A stretch of 64,000 bases of DNA, from the IMG/VR virus record IMGVR_UViG_3300046513_000221, positions 186,001 to 250,000 of that record, one strand, 5' to 3'. Both the position numbers and the translations under genes were made by a program. This document shows positions 11,372 through 62,408 of the stretch, piece after piece (positions within the stretch are counted from its first letter, which is position 1; each line of letters begins with the position of its first letter). The notes under the pieces are model-generated. The model was not told where the DNA came from, made no database searches, and was given only the letters and a program-made list of their open reading frames with translations.

Positions 11372-11441
11372 CAGCGATTCGACCGTAGATTCGAAATGTG
11401 AACTTCTCTATAGTCGATCACTAAAATTGCTGTTGGAAAAC

Positions 11442-12197
11442 ATGAAAAAACTCAAACAGAAAAAGATAACAGTCGTCAACGACGACGCCGAAGAGCCGGT
11501 CGAGGTAGTGACCCCTAAGGCGAAACCCACCAAAGCGAAGTCAGTAAAGATGGACATCGAGAACATCGATGCACCGGATGACAACGTGGAGATCCTTGGC
11601 AAGAGCCAAGCGTACTCGCTCGCGATGTACGTGGACAAGCAGATGGACCCGAAGCTGTTCATCAAGTTCATCAAGCGTGTCGAGCGCCTCGTCCGTGGCA
11701 ACGTGGACTACAAGCTCTACCTCGACTACCTCCGCGAGGAGCGCGGTCTGAACAAGTGCGCTATCTTCCACAACGTCACATCGCAGCGCGCCGAGATCCA
11801 GCTGCACCATGTCCTGAGTAACCTGTACACCATCTGCATCACGGTGTGCAACCGCCTACTCAGCACCGAAAAGAAGGTCTCGTCCTTCATTCTCGCCGAT
11901 GAGGTCATCCGTCTGCACCTTGAGGACAAGATCGCACTGGTTCCTCTGAGCACCACCGTCCACGAACTCGTACACGCCGAGAAGATCCAGATCCCCAAGT
12001 CCCAGATCTACGGCAACTACGCCGCGTACTACGAACAGCACGAAGCCTTCATGGATGACTATGAGAAGGCCATCTATTCGAACAACGAGAAGCTACTGAT
12101 CATCGACCGCGAGGTCGTTTCCGAGCTTGAATATAAACCATCCGGCTCATCCGCAGCCGCCAACGAAGTAGAGGAAGCCGAAGATGAATCTGAATGA
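11442..12197 (+). CDS. Conserved jumbo-phage protein with His-rich HNH-like motif; paralog of 13305-14039
   Basis: YL.YL..E..L..C.....IQLHH...LY.I......EV..LH....VPL.TTVHELVH. Confidence 0.55.
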   Translation: MKKLKQKKITVVNDDAEEPVEVVTPKAKPTKAKSVKMDIENIDAPDDNVEILGKSQAYSLAMYVDKQMDPKLFIKFIKRVERLVRGNVDYKLYLDYLREERGLNKCAIFHNVTSQRAEIQLHHVLSNLYTICITVCNRLLSTEKKVSSFILADEVIRLHLEDKIALVPLSTTVHELVHAEKIQIPKSQIYGNYAAYYEQHEAFMDDYEKAIYSNNEKLLIIDREVVSELEYKPSGSSAAANEVEEAEDESE

Positions 12198-13304: not shown

Positions 13305-14039
13305 ATGAAAAAAGACGAAGACCAACCCATGAGTGCCGATCATTTCTCTCTATACGGCACATCTGGATTTTACGCGACATACAACTTGGTGGAGAACGAG
13401 AAGGCTCGCACCCGCTTCATCCAAGGCGTCGAGCAGATCGTCCGTGGATCCTTCGAGTACTCGAATTTCATCAAGTACCTGAAGACCGAGGCCAAGCTCA
13501 CGTACTGCGATGTGCTGACGGGCCTGAACGAGGACATCATGAAGGATCTCAGCCTTGAGATGCATCACTACCCGTTCACCCTGTACGACATCACAGAGAC
13601 GGTGCTGATGAAGCACCTGCTGAACAACATGGACTTCACCCGGCTGAGTATCGCCAACGAGGTGATGGACCTACACTTCTCCTTGCAGGTCGGGATCATT
13701 CCCCTGACTCTGACCGTCCACCAGCTGGCGCACAGCGGCGGGATCATCGCGGATCTGGACAACATCTTCGGCAACTACACGAAGTTCGCCGAGGACTACG
13801 AGCTTTTCATCCCCGAACCTGCAATGACGAGGCTGAAGGTCTACGAGTCCAAGAGCAAGAACAAGGCTCTGCTCAAGAACACCAATCGCAACACGCTGGA
13901 ATTCAACCCAGGCCTGTTCGTCATCGACTACGAGCCTACCTCCGGCGATCCGGAAGTTGACCAGTGGGAGAAGGGCAAAAAGCCGCCACCTTGGGATCCA
14001 GTAGCGGCCTTCGGTGAAGACACATCCTATGGAGATTGA
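13305..14039 (+). CDS. Conserved jumbo-phage protein with His-rich HNH-like motif; paralog of 11442-12197
   Basis: FIKYLKTE.KL.YC...LEMHH.PF.LYDI...EVMDLH....IIPLTLTVHQLAH. Confidence 0.55.
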   Translation: MKKDEDQPMSADHFSLYGTSGFYATYNLVENEKARTRFIQGVEQIVRGSFEYSNFIKYLKTEAKLTYCDVLTGLNEDIMKDLSLEMHHYPFTLYDITETVLMKHLLNNMDFTRLSIANEVMDLHFSLQVGIIPLTLTVHQLAHSGGIIADLDNIFGNYTKFAEDYELFIPEPAMTRLKVYESKSKNKALLKNTNRNTLEFNPGLFVIDYEPTSGDPEVDQWEKGKKPPPWDPVAAFGEDTSYGD

Positions 14040-14040
14040 T

Positions 14041-14283
14041 ATGAACGAACAGCAAGTACGAAGGGAATTGGCGGCACAGGTCGCCGCCGGGACCATCAGC
14101 GCGTGCGCCTGTATGGGTGCCGTGTACGGGGAACCGCACTGCCCTTGCAAAATGAAGCAACTCGGTCTCCCCAGCTCACCGGCGCACATCGCCGCCAACG
14201 AGAAGGCGAACGAAGACCTCAAGAAGCTCTTCGGCCCCGGTGGCGTATTTCATCGACCCGCTCCCGCTCCAGAAAGTACTTGA
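14041..14283 (+). CDS. Small Cys-containing hypothetical protein
   Basis: GGAG RBS; CACMG...HCPC; 3' end overlaps the convergent glycosylase gene. Confidence 0.6.
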   Translation: MNEQQVRRELAAQVAAGTISACACMGAVYGEPHCPCKMKQLGLPSSPAHIAANEKANEDLKKLFGPGGVFHRPAPAPEST

Positions 14284-14689
14284 GCATGTGGTCCTCCGGA
14301 GCGATTTCCTGATACCGCATCCCGAGAACGAAGATGCAGTAGGACTCCATAGCGTAGTTGCCGACCTGCGGTAGCTTCATGACGGACTCGAACGAGTGCC
14401 AATCCTCTGCTTCCGAATAGGCTCTCGACAGGGTTCTGATAGCCTGAGTCCTGACCACTCCGAAACCCAGCGGCTTGAGCAGGGTGTAGACCTCCTCGTC
14501 GGAGGCCAGTACAAGAAAGTCCTCCGGACTGGGGAACCTTCTGAATAACTCGACAGCGATAGGCTTCGCCACGCTGCCTCTTGCCCGGCGCACTAGAGTG
14601 GCGCAGACGAGAACCTTCCAAGGATCGTTTGCGTACTCCTCCTGAACCAGCCGGTAACCTTCAGGTACGATATCAGTTCTAGTTGACAT
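14219..14689 (-). CDS. MBD4-like HhH-GPD mismatch DNA glycosylase
   Basis: QE..DPWK.L.....RR.RG, FPSP, LKPLGF..R, HhH LPQVGNYA.ESY.IF, catalytic PEDH, all matching the MBD4 glycosylase domain. Confidence 0.85.
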   Translation of the reverse strand: MSTRTDIVPEGYRLVQEEYANDPWKVLVCATLVRRARGSVAKPIAVELFRRFPSPEDFLVLASDEEVYTLLKPLGFGVVRTQAIRTLSRAYSEAEDWHSFESVMKLPQVGNYAMESYCIFVLGMRYQEIAPEDHMLKYFLERERVDEIRHRGRRAS

Positions 14690-14742: not shown

Positions 14743-15078
14743 ATGTTCGGATTCCTCAAACGTAAGCCGGTAGCTCCACCTCCGCTTCCAACCTTCGACT
14801 TCGAGAAAGATACCCAGTATCTCTTCTCGATGATCGCGACCTACATTGAGAGCGAGAAGTTCAAGCTCCGGATTCACCAGAAGACCCTGATGACGGACAA
14901 CGACATCACGGAGATCTCCGTGGCGCTGCTCACCAGCGTCATCGAGTCCATCGCGGAGCCGTATCGCCGCATGCTCACCAAGTACATTCCCGATGAGAAG
15001 ATCGACGACTTCATCGCCGAGATCATCATCCGCAACATGGTGGAGGCAGGTATCACCATCAACCAATCGACAGTGTAA
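14743..15078 (+). CDS. Hypothetical protein with amphipathic N-terminus MFGFLKRKP
   Basis: Strong codon bias; first gene of the acb2 operon. Confidence 0.75.
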   Translation: MFGFLKRKPVAPPPLPTFDFEKDTQYLFSMIATYIESEKFKLRIHQKTLMTDNDITEISVALLTSVIESIAEPYRRMLTKYIPDEKIDDFIAEIIIRNMVEAGITINQSTV

Positions 15079-15087
15079 GGAGAAAGC

Positions 15088-15396
15088 ATGGACAACCAGC
15101 ATCAAAAGATTTCGGGTTACAGGGACTTCGGTCAGGAGACCATCGATAAGATCAACGAGATCAAGGGTCTGGGCAACGGCCAACTGAAGCCCCTGATCGA
15201 CCGTCTGATAGCCGACCACGGCGCAGAGCTGCACCAGACGATCGGTATGCAGACCTCGATGACCGAGGAAGAGTACCTCGCCAAGATGGCCGAATTGGCC
15301 GACGCAAGCAAAAACATGGGAACGGCACAGGAACATCTGCGTATCGGTTTCATGATGCTGATCCGGGTGGTCGCCCGTCCGAAGACCGAGTACTAA
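15088..15396 (+). CDS. acb2: Anti-CBASS protein Acb2 (cyclic-oligonucleotide sponge)
   Basis: MDNQHQKISGYRDFGQETIDKINEIK...GFMMLIRVVARP closely matches Acb2 (MDNQH.KI.GYRD..Q..ID..N..K ... G.M..IR..A.P); Y11 and K26 present. Confidence 0.9.
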   Translation: MDNQHQKISGYRDFGQETIDKINEIKGLGNGQLKPLIDRLIADHGAELHQTIGMQTSMTEEEYLAKMAELADASKNMGTAQEHLRIGFMMLIRVVARPKTEY

Positions 15397-15479: not shown

Positions 15480-15526
15480 AAAAAGAAAGCACCTTGACAC
15501 CGAAATGGCGTCAAGGTGCGTTTCTT
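15480..15526. terminator. Bidirectional terminator
   Basis: GCACCTTGAC / GTCAAGGTGC with flanking A/T tracts. Confidence 0.8.
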
Positions 15527-17053: not shown

Positions 17054-17434
17054 ATGAGTAAACGTAAACAGAGTAAGCAAGATAAAGAAGCCTTGGAGTT
17101 GGAGCGCAAGCTCGGCGGTCTCTTGGGCTGGGTTAACATCGAGCAATCATTGGCAGTTGATGGTACCGTCATCTTCACGGGGATTGCACCGAAGAGCAGT
17201 AAGGTCAGCGTCCTCCCGCAATGGGTACGCGACTGGCGCGACTGCGGTCCTCTGCTGACTCAGGTCAGTATGATCGCGATCTACATCGACAAGGACGCCG
17301 ACGAGATCGAGTGTCATGTCAATTCTCCAAACATGTCGAAGTACAATGACTTGGCACTGCGCATGGGGATCGTCGAATCCTTTATTGACGACATCGAAGA
17401 ACAGAAAGAAGAAGAACCTGTATGCTCCAGCTAA
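17054..17434 (+). CDS. Phage ABA-sandwich-like protein
   Basis: LGW...PQWVRDWRDCGPLL motif; ATG 17054 after GAGGG. Confidence 0.45.
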   Translation: MSKRKQSKQDKEALELERKLGGLLGWVNIEQSLAVDGTVIFTGIAPKSSKVSVLPQWVRDWRDCGPLLTQVSMIAIYIDKDADEIECHVNSPNMSKYNDLALRMGIVESFIDDIEEQKEEEPVCSS

Positions 17435-18780
17435 AACCACGTAACATCGACGATGCATTCGTCGAAGCAAATCTGATCACCAATCACGAGCCACTGAGCA
17501 GCGATGCCAAGTTCACCCTCGACGGCGTCTTCTCCGAGAAGATCTTCGGCACGATGGCGAACGGCATCGACTACTCCTGCACCTGCGGGTGCTATCAAGG
17601 CGAGTTCAACAAGGGCTACGAGTGCGAGATCTGCAACGACCCTGTCGTGTTCAAGGGTCTGGCGCTGAAGAAGGAAGGCTGGATCGATCTGGAGTACCCG
17701 ATCATCCACCCGGTCTTCTACCGCTACCTGAAGAAGATCATCGGTGCGACCAATCTGCAGTCGATCATCAACTACAAGGGCAAGATCAAAGTGTCCGGCC
17801 AGCTGGACGAGGCTCCGCTGGAGTACCCGTTCCACGAGATCGGCATGATGCGTTTCATCGAGAACTTCGAGACCATCGTGGACAGCTACATCAGCCAGAA
17901 GTCCGAGAAGGCCGTCAAGCACGCCAAGGATATCGCCTTCATCGTCGAGCATCAGGAGCTTGTGTTCATCACCAAGTACCCGATCATCAACAGCCGCCTC
18001 CGTCCGGCGACCATCCTGAACGGCGAGTTCAGCTTCGACGCGATCAACAACCTGTACAACGGCATCATCCGTGGCTCCGGTCTGCTGCGCGATCTGACCG
18101 AGATCGAGAAGAACGACATGAACATCCTGTCTCTGGTCTACAAGAACCAGATGCTGGTGAACGAGTTGTTCGATACCGTCATCGACACGCTGTCCAACAA
18201 GGACGGCTACATCCGTGGCTCCCTGATGGGATGCCGCCTGAACTGGTCGAGCCGCAACGTCATCACGCCGCTGACCGGCAAGTACGGTATGGACCAGTGC
18301 GTCATGCCTTACCTGACCGCGATCGAGCTGCTGAAGCCGCTGATCATGCGCAAGCTGCAGAAGCTGAAGAAGATCAGCATCGCGGCGGCGCACAAGATCT
18401 GGTTCGAGGCCAATCTGGTCTACAACAAGCTCGTGCACAGCATCATGCGCGAGCTGGTGAAAGAAAACAACATCCGGATCCTGCTGAACCGTAATCCGAC
18501 GATCTCGGTAGGCTCTATCCTGATGCTGGAGGTAGCCGATATCAAGGAGGACATGGAAGACGTCACCTTGAGCATCTCCAACCTGATCCTGCCGTCCATC
18601 TCCGGCGACTACGACGGAGACGTTCTGAACATCGTCATGCTGTTCTCCAAGGCGTTCGTCGATCTGTTCCGTCCATTCATGCCGAGCAACCTCGTCATCG
18701 ACACCGACAGCGGCGAGTTCAACGGCAATTTCGCACCGTTCAAGGACGTGGCTATCGGCCTCCAGTCCATCGTGAACTAG
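17422..18780 (+). CDS. rpoC: Non-virion RNA polymerase beta' subunit, N-terminal part (catalytic)
   Basis: DGVFSEKIFG, Zn-binding CTCG...CEIC, G.L.G.R..WS.R.VITP, RNPT, catalytic GDYDGD. Confidence 0.93.
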   Translation: MLQLKPRNIDDAFVEANLITNHEPLSSDAKFTLDGVFSEKIFGTMANGIDYSCTCGCYQGEFNKGYECEICNDPVVFKGLALKKEGWIDLEYPIIHPVFYRYLKKIIGATNLQSIINYKGKIKVSGQLDEAPLEYPFHEIGMMRFIENFETIVDSYISQKSEKAVKHAKDIAFIVEHQELVFITKYPIINSRLRPATILNGEFSFDAINNLYNGIIRGSGLLRDLTEIEKNDMNILSLVYKNQMLVNELFDTVIDTLSNKDGYIRGSLMGCRLNWSSRNVITPLTGKYGMDQCVMPYLTAIELLKPLIMRKLQKLKKISIAAAHKIWFEANLVYNKLVHSIMRELVKENNIRILLNRNPTISVGSILMLEVADIKEDMEDVTLSISNLILPSISGDYDGDVLNIVMLFSKAFVDLFRPFMPSNLVIDTDSGEFNGNFAPFKDVAIGLQSIVN

Positions 18781-29579: not shown

Positions 29580-31646
29580 TTACTCTTCGTCGCCGCGTTC
29601 ATCCTGCAGCGTTTCGAGGGCTTCTTCCTCCATCCCCTCGTTCTCCATCGTGATACCGATACCAGAGAAGTACGAGCGAATCACCTGTGCGGCATTCGTG
29701 ATCGTGTTCTCGGTGTCGGTGCCGATGTTGACGCGGTTGATGTTCTGGATGTCGTTGCGCAGCAGCTTGACGATCTGGTTCCGGCGCTCCACGTTGTGCG
29801 AGGAGTAGTGACGCAGGAAGTTCACGATCGGCTTGGAACCTTCTGGGCCGTTGGACAGCATCAGCATGTTGAACGTCTCCTGCTCGCCGAAGCGGATCGG
29901 AGACGAGTTGTTCATCGCGGTACCCTTCTTGTACTGCTCGTTGCTCTTGAACGGAACGTTGAGCAGACTGATCTGACCAGCCGAGCGAACGGAGAACTTC
30001 GACGCGGCCTCGTGCTTCAGCTGAATGAAGTACATGTCGCCGAGGATCTGCGCCTGAAGCAAGCCCTCGAATTTGAGCTTGTTGATGCCGAAGTGGTTAT
30101 ACAGGTTCGACATGATCTGCGGCGTGGCGTTCTCGAAGAAGGGAGGCTGATGGATGTACAGACCCTTCTCGAAGACGGCCTCGCAGTAAGCGTCGATGAA
30201 CTCGTCGGAGTCCGGCTGCGTATCGGCGAACTCCAGCAGCTCGGTACGCTGCAGCGGGTTCAGGATCTCGAAGAACTCCAGAATCGCGTTGAAGAGCCAG
30301 TAATTGCGCTCCAATACCACGCTCTTCGCCTTGAGGATGATCTCGTTGGCGATGAAGTTCAGCTCCTGCTCGAACAGCTGTGCGATGTTCATACGCCCGG
30401 TGACGCCGAGCGGATTCAGCACCACATCCGGGATGCGACCGTCTGCCGTGCGCGGCATCTGGTCATCCGGGATGATGGCGGAGATAACGCCCTTGTTGCC
30501 GTAGCGACCGGTGATCTTCGAACCGATGTAGATGCCGTGGTCCTTGCGGATTTTGAAGCGCAGCACAGCACCCTCGAACTCGGAGCGATCCTGACTGAAC
30601 TTGATGCCCGAGTTGTAGTCCTTGGCCTTCTGGAACAGGAAGCCGACATCGTCGCGCAGGGTCCAGCCGTTCTCTTTGAACTGAGTGATCATGTCCTCCA
30701 GTTCCTGATACTTGGCCTTGTTGTGCTCGATCAGGACGCGGATCGGCTCGTTGAAGGTGTAAGCCAGATCCTTCTCAGCGAAGTTGCTGAAGACCTCGAT
30801 GTCCTCGATGACGCCGTCGAAGAAGAAGCAGGTGTCGGTGCGCTCGATGGTCGCGCCGTTCTCCTTGAAGTCGTTCAGGATCGAACTGTAGTTGATCCGG
30901 CGACGGGCCGCGAGGATGCCGCCCTTGATCTTCTGACCGACCGTCGGGAACGGCTGGTGACGACCCTTGTCGCCGTACAGGTTCAGCAGAACGTCGTTGT
31001 TGTTGACGACGATGTCGGCTTCGGTCACGGAGGTGTGACTGAACTTTTTAGCACCCGACGCACTGAGTGGGATGCCGTCTTCGAAGGTCAGACCGTCTTT
31101 CGCGAGAAACAGCACGTTCAGGTTGACGCCGTACTTCAGATTCAGGCCGTCGTCGTACATGTTGGTGCGCTCCAGCAGCGTTCCGGCCTCCAGAGTATCC
31201 CCGAACTCCATCTCGGGCATTTTCCGTACGTTTTTGTGCCCATAGTTCTCGGTCAGGCGCGACACGGAGGTGTGGTGGAAGACGCCCACGGACTCGTCGC
31301 CGTACAGGAAGAAGTGGTACGCGTTGTTCTCGTTGAACTCCACGGTGCCAATGAAGGTGGCGTCCTCGGTCAACTGGGTGTAGCCCATGCCGTGCGAGTA
31401 CTTACCGACCTGATTCTCGAAGCGGCTGAAGACCTTCGGGATCTCTCCCTCGTTCAGCGTCAGTGCCTGACCGATCTGGCCGGTGAACATGTTCAGGCGC
31501 GAGCCATCACATTTGTTGACGTTTGGAGTGAGGACGTCCTCACCCAAGAAGTAATGGGGTGGTCTTTCCGTCACCACCTCGACGGCCTTAGCGGTTGCGG
31601 TCTTCTTGATGACCTTGGCTGCTTCGGTTGGTTTCTTCTTTGCCAT
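29580..31646 (-). CDS. rpoB: Non-virion RNA polymerase beta subunit, C-terminal part
   Basis: SR..MF, FEDGI, GILAARR, IGSKITGRYGNKGVIS, LNPLGV.GRMN, YF.QLKH, PIRFGEQE. Confidence 0.93.
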   Translation of the reverse strand: MAKKKPTEAAKVIKKTATAKAVEVVTERPPHYFLGEDVLTPNVNKCDGSRLNMFTGQIGQALTLNEGEIPKVFSRFENQVGKYSHGMGYTQLTEDATFIGTVEFNENNAYHFFLYGDESVGVFHHTSVSRLTENYGHKNVRKMPEMEFGDTLEAGTLLERTNMYDDGLNLKYGVNLNVLFLAKDGLTFEDGIPLSASGAKKFSHTSVTEADIVVNNNDVLLNLYGDKGRHQPFPTVGQKIKGGILAARRRINYSSILNDFKENGATIERTDTCFFFDGVIEDIEVFSNFAEKDLAYTFNEPIRVLIEHNKAKYQELEDMITQFKENGWTLRDDVGFLFQKAKDYNSGIKFSQDRSEFEGAVLRFKIRKDHGIYIGSKITGRYGNKGVISAIIPDDQMPRTADGRIPDVVLNPLGVTGRMNIAQLFEQELNFIANEIILKAKSVVLERNYWLFNAILEFFEILNPLQRTELLEFADTQPDSDEFIDAYCEAVFEKGLYIHQPPFFENATPQIMSNLYNHFGINKLKFEGLLQAQILGDMYFIQLKHEAASKFSVRSAGQISLLNVPFKSNEQYKKGTAMNNSSPIRFGEQETFNMLMLSNGPEGSKPIVNFLRHYSSHNVERRNQIVKLLRNDIQNINRVNIGTDTENTITNAAQVIRSYFSGIGITMENEGMEEEALETLQDERGDEE

Positions 31647-37538: not shown

Positions 37539-37804
37539 TACTTCTTCTCGCTTTCCTTCTTGACGTACTCCACGCCGTCGATGACAACGGCGGTCGCCAG
37601 CGATTTACCTTCCGGGACCGTCGCGGAAGTGATACTGTTCGGGCAACGCATGACGGTCAGGCGCTGTCCGTCAGTATTCGTGAGGTAGAAGGTTTTGCAG
37701 TCCTTCAGTTCGGACGGCATCGAAGCGAAGTAGAGGGTCTTGGCGCTGTCTACGCAGCCGGTCAGAGCCAGCATCGATGCCAGCAGAATTGCGATACGCT
37801 TCAT
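37538..37804 (-). CDS. Small lipoprotein (88 aa)
   Basis: Signal peptide II with lipobox LTGC; LKDCK...RCPNS disulfide motif; TAATG coupling to the upstream gene. Confidence 0.8.
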   Translation of the reverse strand: MKRIAILLASMLALTGCVDSAKTLYFASMPSELKDCKTFYLTNTDGQRLTVMRCPNSITSATVPEGKSLATAVVIDGVEYVKKESEKK

Positions 37805-39288
37805 TACATACGCTCCAGGAAAGAAAGAACCTCGCTGATGAGAGGCTTCGGGTTCTCCTCGATTGCTTCGAGGTAGGACGACAGGTCGTTCGACTCGTCG
37901 TGGCTTGGCAGGTACTCGAACTCGGTACTCATGATGTCGCCGATGAACACGATGATCGACTTGTTCTCTTCGATCTTCTCGCGGATGAGCGAGTACTTCG
38001 AGAGGATGTTGTGGTAGGACTTGGACTGCACGATCTCGGTGACCAGCTTGCCCTTGTGCAGGTTGCGACGGCCACCCTTCGGACGGATCTGCGCCGTGAG
38101 GATCGCCGCCAGCGTGTAGTACTTTTGATCGAGCAGCCACTGGCGGAAGATCATCAGCATGTACAGGTATTCCTCGCGGTTGCACAACTGGACGTTGATC
38201 TTGTCCTGTGCGCCGAGATAGTGCGTCATCAGGCGCACCTGCATCTGGTTGGGCTGCACCTTGCGGGTGTTGTACGCCAGCTCCTCCGGCGAGAACCGCA
38301 TCTTGCGGCGATCGATGAAGTTCTTGATGTTCTCCTTGTCGATCGTGTACTGCATCTCGTTGGAGTTCACCAGACGCATCTCGACGCGTTGGAACGGGCT
38401 GACGTTGCTCTCGTTGCTGTCGGTGCGGATCTGGCTGATCGGCTTGAAGTTGATCTTGATGTTCTGCGTGAACTGGTACATGATCTGCTGCTTGATCACG
38501 ACGTGCAGGAAAGAGACGATCGACTTGTTGATGTCGAGCTTCGGTATCGTGTCCCGTACGATCTTGCGGAACAGGTCAAGCGACATGACGTGTTCGTCCA
38601 CCGAGATGTTCTTCAGGTACTCCCACATGACGCGGTCGGAGTACAGGGTGTTGTTGACGGAGGACTTAATGAACTTCGTGATCTTCTGCGGCAGGTCCAG
38701 CTCCACGCCGTGCTCGTCGATGTTGAACACACCGAAGATGCGATTGAACACGTTGATCGTGATGTCCTGCTCCTTCTTGATCTGCATCACGTCCATATAG
38801 GAGCAGATCAGAGGGATGACGATTCTCGACATGATCGAGATGCAGATCACCATCTTGGCGTAGGAGTCCTTGAACTGTAGTTCCTCCTCGCCGGTGCGGG
38901 TCTCGATCGAGATCGTGTACTCCGCATTCACCTTCTCGCGGATGGCCGTTTGCAGGATCTCGTCGCTGATCAGCTGCTCGAACAGGAAGTCGATGAACAG
39001 ATTCACGTCGCCGAATGGCACACCTTCCTCGGTATGACCCTCGATGAAGGTACCGTCCTGGATGTTCATCATCACAGTCAGGTAGCTCTCCGGCAGGTCG
39101 TCGTAGAGGTCGAAGAAGTACTTCAGATCCTCGACGATCTTACCGATGATCGAGTTGTACACTCGCTTTCGGTTGATGGGAAAGAGGCAGTACTTGGCCT
39201 CCTCCCCGATGTTAAACAGCTGGGTGAAATCGAAGGTGAAGTCCTTCTCGTTCACACCAAACAGACTATCAATATTCGTGATCGTCAT
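37804..39288 (-). CDS. Sigma-like promoter-specificity subunit of the non-virion RNAP (AR9 gp226 / phiKZ gp68 type)
   Basis: RI.IP..C, YSDRVMWEYLKN, PKL..N.S..SFL.VVIKQ, F..N..I.FKP resemble AR9 gp226 as recalled; two genes from a chaperonin as in AR9 (g226/g228). Confidence 0.8.
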   Translation of the reverse strand: MTITNIDSLFGVNEKDFTFDFTQLFNIGEEAKYCLFPINRKRVYNSIIGKIVEDLKYFFDLYDDLPESYLTVMMNIQDGTFIEGHTEEGVPFGDVNLFIDFLFEQLISDEILQTAIREKVNAEYTISIETRTGEEELQFKDSYAKMVICISIMSRIVIPLICSYMDVMQIKKEQDITINVFNRIFGVFNIDEHGVELDLPQKITKFIKSSVNNTLYSDRVMWEYLKNISVDEHVMSLDLFRKIVRDTIPKLDINKSIVSFLHVVIKQQIMYQFTQNIKINFKPISQIRTDSNESNVSPFQRVEMRLVNSNEMQYTIDKENIKNFIDRRKMRFSPEELAYNTRKVQPNQMQVRLMTHYLGAQDKINVQLCNREEYLYMLMIFRQWLLDQKYYTLAAILTAQIRPKGGRRNLHKGKLVTEIVQSKSYHNILSKYSLIREKIEENKSIIVFIGDIMSTEFEYLPSHDESNDLSSYLEAIEENPKPLISEVLSFLERM

Positions 39289-40349: not shown

Positions 40350-42050
40350 TTAGATCAGCTGGTTGATACTCAGGAGCATGCCCACGATCGAGACGGACGC
40401 CTTGAGGATCTGGACGTCGGTGTCGATAGGCGCGAGGACTTGTGTTTCCTCGATGCTCTGGAACTGGCGCTCCAGTACGTCGTACATGCGCGAGTCATTC
40501 ATGTGCAGCGCCTCGCGGATCATCTCCAACGCCTCCGGTTGGGAGCGCAGGACAGGATCCTTGCTGATGATGCAGTAGAACGTGTTGTAGTACACGTCGC
40601 GCAGACGGTCGATGACCTGACGCGTGAACTCCAAGTCGAACTGCTTCAGCACCGCGTCGTCCGCATGGATCTCGTCCCAGCGGTTGGCGATAGAATTGGC
40701 CGCAAAGAACAGCGAGATGTTGCCGCCGAATCCGAAGCCCTTCAGCAGGGCCGATTTACAGGCCAATACGGCATCCTCCACGAGGAATCGACGCGTCTGC
40801 TTCTCTTCGGCGGTGATGCCGCCCACCAGAATGCGAACGGACACGCCGTTCAGCTTGGACAGACGGATGCGCAGGTTACCGCGTACCGAAGGCTGGCTGA
40901 TGGGAGTCTCATCGAACTCCTTCTGCAGAACCTGCAGACGCTCGCCGTAGAACGGGGTGTTCAGGGTCATGCCCTGACCTGCGAGGAAGACCGATTTGGT
41001 TCCGGTCAGTTCGAGGCTGCTCGCCGCACCGAGTTGCTTCAGGTCGAAGGTCGCCGGGTCGCGGATGATGTCGGAGTCCAGATAGATTGCCAGATCGAGG
41101 AACTCGTCGTGCTGCAGCTGGCTCGACAGATCGTACGTCTTGACGATGTAGATCTTGTTCTGCTTGCGCAGGAAGTCTGCCATGCAGGTGTTCAGAACGT
41201 CCTGATGGGTCTGGTCGGTGATGACGACGATGTTGCGCGCCGGGTTCGCCTGTTGGACCTTCTTCAGCAGCTCATAGTGCTCGCCGAAGAACTCGTAGCT
41301 CATGAACACGATCGGCTTGTCTACCGTGATGGTGGACTTGTCGCCGAAGTACATGTTGTGCGCCGGACCACGATCGAACGTGAAGCCGTAACGCATGGTG
41401 TGTGACACAGGTGTCAGCGAATCGCGTGGATCCTCTTCGATGCGCACATCCGACAGATAGGACAGACCGGAGAAGACGTTGGCGATGTACTCACCGATGC
41501 GTACATCGTTGTTGTTCGAGATCTGGCTGATGGCCGTCAGCACGCGCTTGCGGTTGTCGCCATTCACCTGATGGGTGTACTTATTCTCGATCTCGCGTTC
41601 GAGATAGAACACCACGCGGTCCAGCAGATCCAGCAGCTGCTTGCGGGTGTACTTCCGGTCGCGCAGGTCCATCAGGGCTTCATACATGAAGCTCGCCGAC
41701 AGAACGGCACTGGTGGAGCCGTCGCCGACGGTCTTGACCAGATTGTAGGACACCTTCTTCAGCAGCTGGTGGACGGCGACGTCCTGCGCAGCAGCATACT
41801 TCAGGTTCTCCAGAATGGTGTAACCATCCTTGGTGATGATCGGAACACCACCATCATTCTCGATCATGGTGTTCGAGCCCAGCGGACCATAGCTCTTCGC
41901 CAGAACGCTGACCAGCGAGGTCAGGAACTTCAGCGTATCACTGTGGAACTGAGCGTCATCCTTGATGACACCTTGGAAAGGCGACGGCGAACCCATTTGC
42001 TGGGCCACAGTCGTCTCGGCAGGTTTCTTTCTTTTCAAAAATTCGAACAT
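40350..42050 (-). CDS. groEL: Phage GroEL-like chaperonin
   Basis: SYGPLGSNTMI, ITKDGYTI, VGDGSTSA, ISNND..IG, VGG.T..E....R..VEDAV.ACKSA..GF..GG. Confidence 0.93.
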   Translation of the reverse strand: MFEFLKRKKPAETTVAQQMGSPSPFQGVIKDDAQFHSDTLKFLTSLVSVLAKSYGPLGSNTMIENDGGVPIITKDGYTILENLKYAAAQDVAVHQLLKKVSYNLVKTVGDGSTSAVLSASFMYEALMDLRDRKYTRKQLLDLLDRVVFYLEREIENKYTHQVNGDNRKRVLTAISQISNNNDVRIGEYIANVFSGLSYLSDVRIEEDPRDSLTPVSHTMRYGFTFDRGPAHNMYFGDKSTITVDKPIVFMSYEFFGEHYELLKKVQQANPARNIVVITDQTHQDVLNTCMADFLRKQNKIYIVKTYDLSSQLQHDEFLDLAIYLDSDIIRDPATFDLKQLGAASSLELTGTKSVFLAGQGMTLNTPFYGERLQVLQKEFDETPISQPSVRGNLRIRLSKLNGVSVRILVGGITAEEKQTRRFLVEDAVLACKSALLKGFGFGGNISLFFAANSIANRWDEIHADDAVLKQFDLEFTRQVIDRLRDVYYNTFYCIISKDPVLRSQPEALEMIREALHMNDSRMYDVLERQFQSIEETQVLAPIDTDVQILKASVSIVGMLLSINQLI

Positions 42051-59564: not shown

Positions 59565-62408
59565 TTACTGACAGGCTTCGCATTCCTCGAAGCCGGGGTC
59601 GCCCGGACGCATGTAGCATGCGGCACCGGCGTCAGCCTCACCTGCACCCGGAACAGCGACAGGAGCCGCTGCGACAGGTACATTGGACTGTACCGCGTTC
59701 AGTTCACCGCCCCGGCCAGTCGATTTCTCGGCGGAGGTAGCGGAGGTGGTACGCAGGTAGTAGGTGGTCTTCAGACCGCGCTGCCATGCCAGCTTGTAGG
59801 TGGCATCCAGCTTCTTGCCGGAAGCACCGGCCATGTAGATGTTGAGGCTCTGCGCCTGATCGATCCACTTCTGACGGCGAGCTGCCGCCTCGATCAACCA
59901 TTCCGGAGCGATCTCGAACGCCGTTGCATAGACGTCCTTGATGCTCTGTGGGATGCGGCTGATCTTCTGGATCGAACCGTCGTAGAACTTGATGTCCGAG
60001 ATCATGACCTCGTCCCACAGGCCCAATTCTTTCAGGTCGGCAACCAGATAGCGGTTGATGATCGTGAACTCGCCGGACAGGTTCGACTTGACGAACAGGT
60101 TCTGGAAGGTCGGCTCGATGCACGCCGATACGTCGATGATGTTACTGATCGTCGCGGTCGGAGCGATAGCGAGGCAGTTCGAGTTGCGCATGCCGTGGTA
60201 CTTGATGCGCTGACGCAGCTCGTCCCACACCGATTCGCCGTAGAAGCTGTCGGTGTTGATGGTCAGGTACTCGGCACCGCGCTCTTCGGCCAGCAGACGC
60301 TGGGAGTCCTGCGGCAGAATGCCCTTGGACCACAGCGAGCCTTCGAACGTGAAGTAGCGACCGCGCTCGATAGCCATGTCGCACGACGACGAGTAGGCGT
60401 GGTACGCGATCATTTCAGTCGATTTGTCCGCGAACAGGACGGCATCTTCCGAAGCGTACGGGACGTGCATCATCTGCAAGCAGTCCTGGAAACCCATCAT
60501 GCCCAGACCGACAGGGCGGTGGCGCATGTTGGAGTTCTTTGCCTTCTCGACCGAGTAGAAGTTCAGGTCGATGACGTTGTCCAGAATGCGCATTGCAGTC
60601 TTGACGGTCTTCGCCAGTTTCGACTCGTCGATGTCGTACACCGGTGCGCCGGTGATGGCATCGTTGCCGATCTTGATCATGTGAGCGACCAGATTGACGG
60701 AGCCAATGTTGCATACGGCGATCTCGTCGGCGCTGGTGTTCAGGGTGATCTCGGTACACAGGTTCGAGCTGTGAACGACGCCCATGTGCTGCTGCGGCGA
60801 ACGGATGTTGCACGGATCCTTGAAGGTGATCCATGGGTGGCCGGTCTCGAACAGCATCGACAGCATCTTGCGCCACAGATCGACGGCCTTGACGGTCTTG
60901 AACAGCTTGATCTCGCCGGTCTGCGTCTTGCGCTCGGCGTTGGTGTAGGCGGTCTCGAATGCGCGACCGAACAGATCGTGCAGGTCGGTGACGTCGGAAG
61001 GCGAGAACAGGGTCCATTCACCCTTCTCCATGACACGCTTCATGAACAGATCGGGGATCCAGTTCGCGGTGTTCATGTCGTGAGTACGACGGCGCTCATC
61101 GCCGGTGTTCTTACGCAGGTCGAGGAATTCCTCGATGTCGAGGTGCCACGTTTCCAGATAGGCGCAGACAGCGCCCTTGCGCTTGCCGCCTTGGTTCACG
61201 GCGACGGCGGTGTCGTTCACCACCTTCAGGAACGGTACGACGCCTTGCGACTTGCCGTTCGTTCCCTTGATGCGAGCGCCCAGCGAACGAACTGGAGTCC
61301 AGTCGTTGCCCAGACCGCCAGCCCACTTCTGCAAGCGAGCGTTGTCGTGGATACCGTCGTAGATGCCGTCCAGATCATCGCTGATCGTGGTCAGGAAGCA
61401 CGATGCCAGCTGCGGACGCGTAGTACCGGAGTTGAACAGCGTTGGGGTGGAATTCATGTACTCGAACTGCGACAGCAGGTCGTAGAACTCGATGGCGCGA
61501 GCTTCGCGGTCGGACTCGTTCAGGGCCAGACCCATAGCCACGCGCATCCAGAAGATCTGCGAGGACTCGTAACGAACTTCTTCCTGATGCAGGAAGTAGC
61601 GGTCGTACAGGGTTTGCAGACCGATGAAGCTGAACTGCGCATCGCGTTCCCACTTCAGGGCCGCTTGCAGACGGTCCAGATCGTAGGTTGCCATTGCCGG
61701 TTGCAGCATTTCCAGCTTGACGCCCAGCTCGATCGATGCGCGCAGCACCTGATCGCGTTCCGGTTTGTTCAGGTGGAAGAAGACTTCCTTGTGGATGTCA
61801 TCGGCCAGCAGACGTGCAGTCACTTGATTGTACTGCGGCTCGGTCTCGATGAAGCCACGAGCGGCCATCAGGACAGCCTTGTCGATCTCGGCTTCGGTGA
61901 CGCCGTTGTACAGCTGCTGGTACATCACATCGAAGATGGCGTCCGGGTTAACGTTGTCCAGACCCTTGCAAGCGTCCTTGATGCGGATGCGCAGGTAAGC
62001 GGTCGATACGATACCCTCGGTACCGTCGGTGTTGATCATGCGCATCTTGATTGCGCCGCCGTTGTCGTGGCCCACTTCGCGCTCGGCGCGGTGGCGGTTG
62101 CGGTAGATGACGTAGTCACGTGCCACATCGTGCAATGCGGAGCGCATCATGTACAGTTCGACGGTGTCCTGCACGGTCTCGATGTTGACGGCGGTCAGGC
62201 CGGAGCGTTCGCAGGAGGCTTCCAGATGTTTGACGATGTCGATGGTCAGGGTAGCTGCCAGTTCGCGCTCGCCTTGCGACAGGACGCCAGCGCTGTTGCG
62301 CAGTTGACCATCGGCATCCTTCAGCATTGCTTGCAGGATTGCGTTGGTGATCTTTTCCGCTGCGAAAGGCACTACGTTACCATCGCGTTTGATAATCTTA
62401 TCCAGCAT
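59565..62408 (-). CDS. nrdA: Ribonucleotide reductase class Ia alpha subunit with two ATP cones
   Basis: IKRDG ATP cone, STPTLFNSG, QLASC, GGLG, NLCTEI, CNIGS, APTATIS, TTYYLR. Confidence 0.98.
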   Translation of the reverse strand: MLDKIIKRDGNVVPFAAEKITNAILQAMLKDADGQLRNSAGVLSQGERELAATLTIDIVKHLEASCERSGLTAVNIETVQDTVELYMMRSALHDVARDYVIYRNRHRAEREVGHDNGGAIKMRMINTDGTEGIVSTAYLRIRIKDACKGLDNVNPDAIFDVMYQQLYNGVTEAEIDKAVLMAARGFIETEPQYNQVTARLLADDIHKEVFFHLNKPERDQVLRASIELGVKLEMLQPAMATYDLDRLQAALKWERDAQFSFIGLQTLYDRYFLHQEEVRYESSQIFWMRVAMGLALNESDREARAIEFYDLLSQFEYMNSTPTLFNSGTTRPQLASCFLTTISDDLDGIYDGIHDNARLQKWAGGLGNDWTPVRSLGARIKGTNGKSQGVVPFLKVVNDTAVAVNQGGKRKGAVCAYLETWHLDIEEFLDLRKNTGDERRRTHDMNTANWIPDLFMKRVMEKGEWTLFSPSDVTDLHDLFGRAFETAYTNAERKTQTGEIKLFKTVKAVDLWRKMLSMLFETGHPWITFKDPCNIRSPQQHMGVVHSSNLCTEITLNTSADEIAVCNIGSVNLVAHMIKIGNDAITGAPVYDIDESKLAKTVKTAMRILDNVIDLNFYSVEKAKNSNMRHRPVGLGMMGFQDCLQMMHVPYASEDAVLFADKSTEMIAYHAYSSSCDMAIERGRYFTFEGSLWSKGILPQDSQRLLAEERGAEYLTINTDSFYGESVWDELRQRIKYHGMRNSNCLAIAPTATISNIIDVSACIEPTFQNLFVKSNLSGEFTIINRYLVADLKELGLWDEVMISDIKFYDGSIQKISRIPQSIKDVYATAFEIAPEWLIEAAARRQKWIDQAQSLNIYMAGASGKKLDATYKLAWQRGLKTTYYLRTTSATSAEKSTGRGGELNAVQSNVPVAAAPVAVPGAGEADAGAACYMRPGDPGFEECEACQ

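What the first reader, a model, noticed from the sequence alone, without database searches (positions are those of the whole stretch)
15088..15396. Acb2 anti-CBASS sponge in a jumbo phage, with a divergent trinucleotide-site region
Seen: the N-terminal cyclic-dinucleotide-binding residues (Y11, K26) and the C-terminal IR..A.P are conserved. The segment matching the recalled PaMx33 Acb2 RWLAIGKTDIQTG reads KNMGTAQEHLRIG, and there is an insertion. Established: Acb2 hexamers bind cyclic di- and trinucleotides at separate sites. Inference: altered ligand range, and an indication that this phage's DNA is exposed to cytoplasmic immunity.
Basis: partly seen in the sequence, partly recalled or inferred. 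Interest (0 to 1): 0.65.

Follow-up and report, generated by a model that had tools for sequence, protein, structure and literature searches.

The report
Acb2 anti-CBASS sponge, jumbo phage
This small gene in a 263-kb soil phage is a real but divergent member of the known Acb2 family of phage "sponge" proteins that soak up bacterial alarm nucleotides; its dinucleotide pocket is intact and its second (trinucleotide) pocket has changed, a kind of variation already described in this family.

Summary
The ORF exists as described: window 15088-15396, + strand, 102 aa, with an AAGGAG ribosome-binding site and a hairpin terminator downstream. It is an Acb2 homologue. It matches PaMx33 Acb2 in the PDB at E 3.9e-10 over the full length, matches a family profile at 99.5% hhalign probability, and its AF2 model's best PDB matches are Acb2 (TM 0.68-0.84).

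The dinucleotide-site residues Y11, K26 and P98 (PaMx33 P90) are kept. The trinucleotide-site residues have changed: R67->K75, T74->E82, W68->N76, A70->G78, I71->T79, P65->A73. This is not exceptional. Among 76 unique IMG/VR homologues, 24 lack the R plus T/S pair and 13 lack both. T4 and CHI14 Acb2, which each lack one of the pair, bind dinucleotides but not cA3.

The most likely function is a cyclic-dinucleotide sponge with cA3 binding lost or weakened.

The genome is a complete 263,413-bp phage, syntenic with Yersinia phage phiR1-37. It has multisubunit RNA polymerases and no detectable chimallin. Acb2 sits as an accessory gene in a conserved block.

The lack of chimallin does independently suggest a phage without a nucleus.

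A sister strain carries an allele with a dense patch of changes in codons 2-12. Verdict: a new member of a known kind, of moderate to low interest.

The parts
15088..15396 (+). acb2 coding sequence (102 aa, protein P0001), stop codon included
   Evidence: ORF list and translation. PDB phmmer hit to PaMx33 Acb2 8h2j, E 3.9e-10, residues 1-99. phrog_717, E 1.3e-13. hhalign 99.45% against a family profile. The AF2 model matches Acb2 structures best.
15077..15082 (+). Shine-Dalgarno-like AAGGAG, 5 nt before the ATG, overlapping the TAA stop of the upstream gene (suggests translational coupling)
   Evidence: Read directly from the sequence.
15118..15165 (+). Codons 11-26, carrying the cyclic-dinucleotide pocket residues Y11 (15118-15120) and K26 (15163-15165). 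F14 replaces an otherwise invariant Leu.
   Evidence: Y11 and K26 are 76/76 conserved; L14 is 76/76 in homologues but F here. The roles of Y11, K26, L14 and P90 come from PMC10312549 and PMC12393519.
15310..15348 (+). Codons 75-87 (KNMGTAQEHLRIG), the equivalent of PaMx33 R67-G79 that lines the cyclic-trinucleotide pocket. R67->K75 and T74->E82.
   Evidence: Alignments. Residue roles from PMC10312549. Residue frequencies in 76 homologues.
15091..15123 (+). Patch at the 5' end of the gene (codons 2-12) that differs densely from the sister-strain allele
   Evidence: 17 of the 20 acb2 nucleotide differences fall here. The locus-wide difference is 2.25%, and the upstream gene has 0 differences in 336 nt.
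14743..15078 (+). Upstream gene (111 aa), homologue of phiR1-37 g277, probably co-transcribed with acb2 (9-nt gap)
   Evidence: BLASTP to phiR1-37 g277: 28% identity, E 3e-12. phrog_26727.
15489..15519 (.). GC-rich hairpin between the convergent acb2 and g276-like genes. It has a T-run on the minus strand and a weaker one on the plus strand, so it is a likely terminator.
   Evidence: Terminator scan. RNA fold -26.2 kcal/mol, z -6.3. phiR1-37 has an annotated bidirectional terminator at the syntenic position.

Best explanation
The gene encodes a divergent member of the Acb2 (T4 Vs.4) family of phage sponge proteins.

Likely mechanism, inferred from solved homologues: the helical-hairpin protomers assemble into a hexamer. 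Pairs of N-terminal segments form three pockets. Each pocket holds a CBASS cyclic dinucleotide (3'3'-cGAMP, cUA and similar) between Tyr11 rings and Lys26 salt bridges. The CD-NTase signal therefore never reaches the CBASS effector and the infected cell is not killed early.

The second pocket, on the three-fold axis, binds cA3/cAAG in PaMx33 Acb2 through R67 and T74. Here it is remodelled (K75, E82, N76, G78, T79, and no Pro at the kink position). Trinucleotide binding is therefore probably lost or much weakened, as in T4 and CHI14 Acb2.

The gene is an accessory gene sitting at the 3' end of a conserved operon in a phiR1-37-like jumbo phage from rhizosphere. That phage has no detectable chimallin.

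Shown here: family membership, residue identities, fold and genomic setting. Inferred: hexamer formation, ligand binding, CBASS inhibition and loss of cA3 binding.
For: Homology:
- PDB phmmer to PaMx33 Acb2, E 3.9e-10 over residues 1-99.
- A family profile that included the query found PaMx33 Acb2 and T4 Vs.4 in the PDB.
- hhalign 99.45%, E 4.5e-22, against a profile without the query.
- phrog_717, E 1.3e-13.

Fold:
- AF2 pLDDT 85.4, with two long helices at 16-53 and 60-96.
- Best Foldseek PDB matches are Acb2 8h2j/8h2x (TM 0.68-0.84), followed by T4 Vs.4 7uq2.

Dinucleotide pocket:
- Y11, K26 and P98 are identical to residues conserved in 76/76 homologues.
- Their roles are known from PMC10312549 and PMC12393519.

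Trinucleotide pocket:
- R67A abolishes cA3 binding and T74A weakens it.
- T4 Acb2 (no Arg) and CHI14 Acb2 (E76 at the position the authors later mutated to Thr, E76T) bind cGAMP but not cA3.
- This protein has Lys and Glu at those positions.
- The modelled helix 60-96 is continuous, and there is no Pro at the PaMx33 E64-P65 kink position.

Gene reality:
- SD site and terminator are present.
- The gene is kept intact in a sister strain seen in other samples.
- Gene GC is 55.3% against 55.2% for the genome.
Against: - No binding, oligomer or CBASS data exist for this protein.
- The Pfam PF24729 score (20 bits) is below the gathering cut-off of 27.
- The dimer-plus-cGAMP co-fold gave no verdict.
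- Lys75 keeps a positive charge and could still contact a phosphate, so loss of trinucleotide binding is not certain.
- Phe14 replaces a Leu that is invariant in 76 homologues and could change dinucleotide preference.
- The host is unknown, so it is not known whether it carries CBASS.
Confidence: 0.72

Rival explanations
1. It is a full-spectrum Acb2: the remodelled second pocket still binds cyclic trinucleotides (cA3/cAAG), with Lys75 substituting for Arg67.
For: Lys75 is a conservative replacement that keeps the positive charge. Overall fold similarity is closer to PaMx33 Acb2 (TM up to 0.84) than to T4 Vs.4 (TM about 0.5).
Against: - Glu82 puts a negative charge where Thr74 hydrogen-bonds a phosphate.
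- CHI14 Acb2 has the Arg but carries E76 at that position, and does not bind cA3.
- The hydrophobic liners A70/I71 are G78/T79 here.
- There is no Pro at the kink position that enlarges the pocket.
Confidence: 0.12
2. It is an Acb2 retuned to another signal. One option is a Thoeris 3'cADPR sponge like Acb2_43. Another is a second pocket that now takes a different nucleotide. The strain-variable N-terminus would act as a specificity determinant.
For: - 10 of 46 tested Acb2 homologues inhibit type I Thoeris.
- In Acb2_43, N-terminal residues 4-7 form the ligand pocket (PMC12393519).
- In this phage, codons 2-12 are the one segment that differs sharply between two otherwise near-identical strains.
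- F14 is unique among 76 homologues.
Against: - Acb2_43 uses extra N- and C-terminal beta-strands and did not inhibit CBASS.
- This protein keeps the canonical Y11/K26/P98 dinucleotide pocket.
- The model shows no strands.
Confidence: 0.1
3. It is a decayed or non-functional remnant, or a helical-hairpin protein with an unrelated role.
For: It is below the Pfam gathering score. No close relatives exist outside its own phage lineage: the best is 40% identity.
Against: - The ORF is intact with an SD site.
- All family-invariant residues except L14 are kept.
- It is retained in a sister strain.
- Its composition matches the genome.
Confidence: 0.05

Closest known systems
Acb2 of Pseudomonas phage PaMx33 (p26; PDB 8h2j, 8h2x, 8ixz and others)
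   Same: - Similar size (102 aa here against 93) and the same helical-hairpin fold.
- The N-terminal 29 residues are closely similar, including Y11 and K26.
- The C-terminal G-x-M...IRxxAxP is kept, including P90/P98.
- Both are the last gene before a hairpin terminator that faces a convergent gene.
   Different: - About 33% identity overall.
- R67->K, W68->N, A70->G, I71->T, T74->E, P65->A in the trinucleotide pocket.
- L14->F.
- One-residue insertion after G29 and a middle segment about 8 residues longer.
- The host phage is a 263-kb jumbo phage rather than a 43-kb siphophage.
T4 Vs.4 (T4 Acb2, PDB 7uq2) and Serratia phage CHI14 Acb2
   Same: Acb2 family members that lack one of the R67/T74 pair. 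They bind cyclic dinucleotides but not cA3 (PMC10312549). This is the behaviour predicted here.
   Different: Far more distant in sequence. T4 Vs.4 was reached only with the family profile (E 5e-8). Fold match TM is about 0.5. This protein lacks both canonical residues rather than one.
Acb2_43 (3'cADPR-binding Acb2 homologue, Hadary et al. 2025)
   Same: Same family and hexameric hairpin architecture. It shows that the N-terminal residues of Acb2 can define ligand specificity.
   Different: Acb2_43 has extra beta-strands at both termini and does not inhibit CBASS. This protein keeps the canonical Tyr/Lys pocket, and no strands are predicted.
Yersinia phage phiR1-37 (genome backbone)
   Same: About 70 syntenic genes at 25-60% amino-acid identity. 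Both have multisubunit RNA polymerase subunits, a GroEL-like chaperonin, a Dcd-like deaminase, no ThyA and no chimallin.
   Different: phiR1-37 has no Acb2. At the syntenic place it has only g277 followed by the terminator. Genome GC here is 55%.

Membership tests
Acb2 / Vs.4 sponge family | Significant full-length sequence similarity to experimentally characterised Acb2 | tested here: met
   PaMx33 Acb2 8h2j, E 3.9e-10, residues 1-99. hhalign 99.45%, E 4.5e-22, against a profile of 22 homologues.
Acb2 / Vs.4 sponge family | Pfam PF24729 (Acb2_Tad1_hairpin) at or above the gathering score | tested here: not met
   20 bits against a cut-off of 27, E 8e-4, though it covers the whole 58-position model. 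The long middle insert splits the short model. The other sequence and fold tests are met.
Acb2 / Vs.4 sponge family | Helical-hairpin protomer fold like the solved Acb2 structures | tested here: met
   AF2 pLDDT 85.4. The top nine Foldseek PDB hits are all Acb2 or Vs.4 chains, with TM 0.68-0.84 to 8h2j/8h2x.
Acb2 / Vs.4 sponge family | Cyclic-dinucleotide pocket residues (PaMx33 Y11, K26; also L14, P90) | tested here: met
   Y11, K26 and P98 are identical. L14 is replaced by F14.
Acb2 / Vs.4 sponge family | Homo-hexamer assembly | tested here: inconclusive
   Only a dimer plus cGAMP could be submitted. Score 0.39 against a mark of 0.42: no verdict. A hexamer job was not accepted.
Acb2 / Vs.4 sponge family | Binds CBASS cyclic dinucleotides and inhibits CBASS | not testable with these tools
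   Needs ITC or native-gel binding and plaque assays.
Dual-pocket (dinucleotide plus trinucleotide) Acb2 subclass, PaMx33/JBD67 type | Arg67 and Thr74 equivalents lining the three-fold pocket, plus the helix kink at E64-P65 | tested here: not met
   K75 and E82 at the two positions, and A73 at the Pro position. The modelled helix 60-96 is unbroken.
Chimalliviridae (nucleus-forming jumbo phages) | Encodes chimallin (nuclear shell protein, phrog_4795) | tested here: not met
   No hit in the complete genome at E<=1. The phiKZ control scored E 1.8e-232.

The most novel reading that the evidence does not exclude
The remodelled three-fold pocket (K75/N76/G78/T79/E82), the unique F14 and the strain-variable N-terminus (MDNQHQKI against MKDQHTLI) together retune this Acb2 to a signal outside the known cGAMP/cA3 set. 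The 5' patch would then record ongoing allele exchange driven by host signal diversity in a soil phage lineage that lacks a nucleus.
Probability: 0.1. Interest if true: 0.6.

Novelty: new member of a known kind. Interest (0 to 1): 0.3.

Why it matters
It adds a divergent Acb2 to a little-studied lineage: phiR1-37-like jumbo phages from rhizosphere, with multisubunit RNA polymerases and no chimallin. No cultured relative checked here (phiR1-37) has one.

It supports the published picture that the dinucleotide pocket of Acb2 is fixed while the trinucleotide pocket drifts.

The two natural alleles differ almost only in codons 2-12. They offer a ready-made pair for testing whether the extreme N-terminus affects ligand choice.

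It does not open a new class of mechanism.

Tried and rejected
- Megablast of the locus against cultured phages: no match.
- Word-based search of 5.8 billion proteins: only the query's own cluster and one weak 77-aa hit. I did not run the costly exhaustive representative search, because the family was already clear and close relatives would have shared 5-residue words.
The dimer with 3'3'-cGAMP gave 'no verdict' (0.39 against a mark of 0.42, controls 0.00). This is evidence neither for nor against binding.
- Donor for the 5' patch: none of 97 fetched acb2 genes matches either allele closely over the first 39 nt (best 31/39).
- RNA evidence: none of the runs found to hold the locus is recorded as RNA, so expression and timing are untested.
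- Sigma-70-type promoter scan: none found. This is expected for a phage with its own RNA polymerases.
- Other sponges in the genome: no Tad2-like hit and no second Acb2/Tad1 hairpin hit. Acb1 was not searched.
- ThyX: one 13-bit hit below the cut-off, treated as noise.
- tRNA and Rfam scans of the window: nothing.
- An AF2 control model of a canonical kinked homologue was considered and dropped, because no fetched locus is close enough to PaMx33 (best 61% identity). The 'no kink' point therefore stays an inference.
- The 89-aa ORF at 14014-14283 overlaps the glycosylase gene and was not called as a gene in the sister contigs. I treat it as doubtful.

Full report
**1. The observation**

The window has an ORF at 15088-15396 on the + strand. 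It has an ATG start, encodes 102 aa, and has only three open codons upstream. An AAGGAG motif lies 5 nt before the ATG and overlaps the TAA stop of the preceding gene.

Downstream, between this gene and a convergent gene, is a strong hairpin at 15489-15519. It folds at -26.2 kcal/mol with z = -6.3. It has a T-run on the minus strand and a weaker one on the plus strand.

- The PDB sequence of PaMx33 Acb2 (8h2j) contains RWLAIGKTDIQTG.
- It aligns to KNMGTAQEHLRIG here.
- Y11 and K26 are in place.
- The C-terminal IRxxAxP is kept.

Three other alignments give the same register: MAFFT and hhalign. The alignment is ungapped from residue 75 to 98.

**2. What it is**

By sequence it is an Acb2 homologue:
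- E 3.9e-10 to PaMx33 Acb2 over residues 1-99.
- phrog_717, E 1.3e-13.
- hhalign probability 99.45% (E 4.5e-22) against a profile of 22 homologues that did not include the query.
- A family profile that included the query also reaches T4 Vs.4 in the PDB (E 5e-8).

The Pfam hairpin model PF24729 matches end to end, but at 20 bits it is below the 27-bit cut-off.

An AF2 model built from 26 sequences has pLDDT 85.4 and two long helices, 16-53 and 60-96. Its best PDB matches are Acb2 chains (TM 0.68-0.84), followed by T4 Vs.4.

**3. How unusual the trinucleotide-site region is**

Cao et al. (PMC10312549) report the following:
- cA3 is held by R67 and T74, with A70 and I71 as hydrophobic liners.
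- A helix kink at E64 enlarges the pocket.
- These residues are 'less conserved' than Y11 and K26.
- T4 Acb2 (no Arg) and CHI14 Acb2 (which carries E76, the residue the authors later mutated to Thr) bind cGAMP but not cA3.

The equivalents here are K75, E82, G78, T79 and N76 (for W68). A73 stands at the Pro position next to the kink.

I collected 76 unique homologues from IMG/VR and aligned them:

| Position (PaMx33 numbering) | Residue here | Frequency in 76 homologues |
|---|---|---|
| Y11, K26, L14, P90 | Y11, K26, F14, P98 | each 76/76 |
| R67 | K75 | R in 58, K in 3 |
| T74 | E82 | T in 52, S in 5, E in 2 |
| R67 plus T74 (T or S) together | neither | both kept in 52; both lost in 13 |

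This sample is biased towards the MDNQH subclade, because the search patterns were N-terminal.

The divergence is real, but it belongs to a sizeable minority pattern in the family. Total protein length ranges from 74 to 110 aa in the sample, so the 'insertion' is also within the normal range.

The one singular feature is F14. It replaces a Leu that is invariant in all 76 homologues and that contacts the cGAMP adenine in PaMx33 (PMC12393519).

**4. Relatives**

No protein closer than 40% identity was found outside the phage's own lineage.

Its 90% cluster holds one other member, P0003, from sister contigs in other rhizosphere samples. The two alleles are 96/102 identical.

**5. The genome**

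The window is bases 186001-250000 of a 263,413-bp virus record with direct terminal repeats. The window encodes split RNA polymerase beta-type subunits, a GroEL-like chaperonin and a ribonucleotide reductase.

A tblastn of all ORFs against Yersinia phage phiR1-37 shows about 70 largely collinear homologues at 25-60% identity.

The chimallin profile phrog_4795 finds phiKZ gp54 (E 1.8e-232) but nothing in this genome or in phiR1-37.

The literature places phiR1-37, PBS1 and PALS_2 as phages with multisubunit RNA polymerases but no chimallin. It describes such phages as developing without a nucleus and carrying uracil DNA.

This genome shows a matching gene set:
- It has a deaminase syntenic with the phiR1-37 dCTP deaminase.
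- It has no ThyA.
- It has only a sub-threshold ThyX hit, treated as noise.

dU-DNA is therefore possible but not shown.

**6. The local setting**

The flanks match phiR1-37 gene for gene:
- Helicase
- g282-like and g278-like (a paralogue pair)
- g277-like (window 14743-15078; 28% identity, E 3e-12)
- Terminator
- g276-like
- RNA polymerase beta subunit

acb2 has no counterpart in phiR1-37. It lies between the g277-like gene and the terminator. An MBD4-like glycosylase gene on the opposite strand (14219-14689) also has no counterpart at this place.

acb2 is thus an accessory gene within a conserved block. Which lineage gained or lost it cannot be told from these two genomes. Its GC content (55.3%) equals that of the genome (55.2%), which argues against a recent arrival.

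**7. Mechanism**

By homology, the most likely function is a hexameric sponge that sequesters CBASS cyclic dinucleotides between Y11 and K26 of paired protomers.

The three-fold pocket probably no longer binds cA3/cAAG, for three reasons:
- Glu replaces the phosphate-bonding Thr.
- The hydrophobic liners are changed.
- The Pro at the kink position is absent, and the modelled helix is continuous.

Lys75 leaves some doubt. None of this is measured. A dimer-plus-cGAMP co-fold gave no verdict, and a hexamer job could not be submitted.

**8.

Carrying Acb2 does not show that the phage's DNA is exposed. PhiKZ, which has a nucleus, still elicits CBASS/NucC activity, and Acb2 supplied in trans rescues a sensitive PhiKZ mutant (PMC12676376).

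The absence of chimallin does independently suggest that this phage replicates without a shell. Five other large Acb2-carrying phage genomes (126-354 kb) also lack chimallin. That is a small, unsystematic sample.

**9. Microdiversity**

Against the sister contig, the 6.3-kb locus differs at 2.25% of positions. The upstream gene has 0 differences in 336 nt.

acb2 has 20 differences, and 17 of them lie in codons 2-12 (15091-15123). They change MDNQHQKIS to MKDQHTLIS and include a TCG-to-AGT serine codon switch.

This density points to a short recombination patch from a different acb2 allele rather than to point mutation. No donor was found.

In Acb2_43 the N-terminal residues 4-7 form the ligand pocket. 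The patch could therefore matter for specificity, but that is speculation.

**10. Verdict**

The Acb2 assignment is sound. The trinucleotide-site divergence is real, but it is of a kind already published.

This is a new, divergent member of a known family in an under-sampled jumbo-phage lineage.

Noticed in passing
window 15091-15123 (codons 2-12 of acb2); sister allele P0003, loci L136:3001-3309 and L137:683-991: Two near-identical rhizosphere strains carry acb2 alleles that differ almost only in a dense 5' patch: 17 nt changes in 33 nt, MDNQHQKIS against MKDQHTLIS. The gene upstream is 100% identical. This looks like a short recombination patch; no donor was found.
   Followed up: partly
window 14219-14689 (-): A 156-aa MBD4-like HhH DNA glycosylase domain (PDB 4ew4, E 4.9e-15; Pfam HhH-GPD just under the cut-off). 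It is absent from the syntenic place in phiR1-37. Where MBD4 has GKYGNDSYRIF this protein reads GNYAMESYCIF, so Glu stands at the position I recall as the catalytic Asp. This is curious in a phage whose gene set hints at uracil DNA.
   Followed up: partly
genome G000:C1:78247-78816 (outside the window) and the whole genome: A deaminase syntenic with the phiR1-37 dCTP deaminase is present, there is no ThyA, and ThyX gives only a sub-threshold hit. Together with no chimallin and multisubunit RNA polymerases, this fits the dU-DNA, nucleus-less jumbo phage group. The DNA chemistry is untested.
   Followed up: partly
window 11427-12197 (+) and 13305-14039 (+): A paralogue pair of phrog_12252 (function unknown). 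The two genes match phiR1-37 g282 and g278 respectively, so the duplication predates the split of the two phages.
   Followed up: no
window 40350-42050 (-), 17422-18780 (+), 29580-31646 (-), 37804-39288 (-), 59565-62408 (-): A GroEL-like chaperonin, three split RNA polymerase beta-type subunits and a class I ribonucleotide reductase large subunit: the usual core genes of this kind of jumbo phage.
   Followed up: no
loci L031, L076, L086, L096 (IMG/VR) and L033 (Yersinia phage fHe-Yen9-04): Five other large phage genomes (126-354 kb) that carry Acb2 homologues have no chimallin hit either. A small sample, not a survey.
   Followed up: partly
window 14014-14283 (+): An 89-aa ORF that overlaps the 3' end of the glycosylase gene by 65 nt. 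It was not called as a gene in the sister contigs and is probably not a gene.
   Followed up: no
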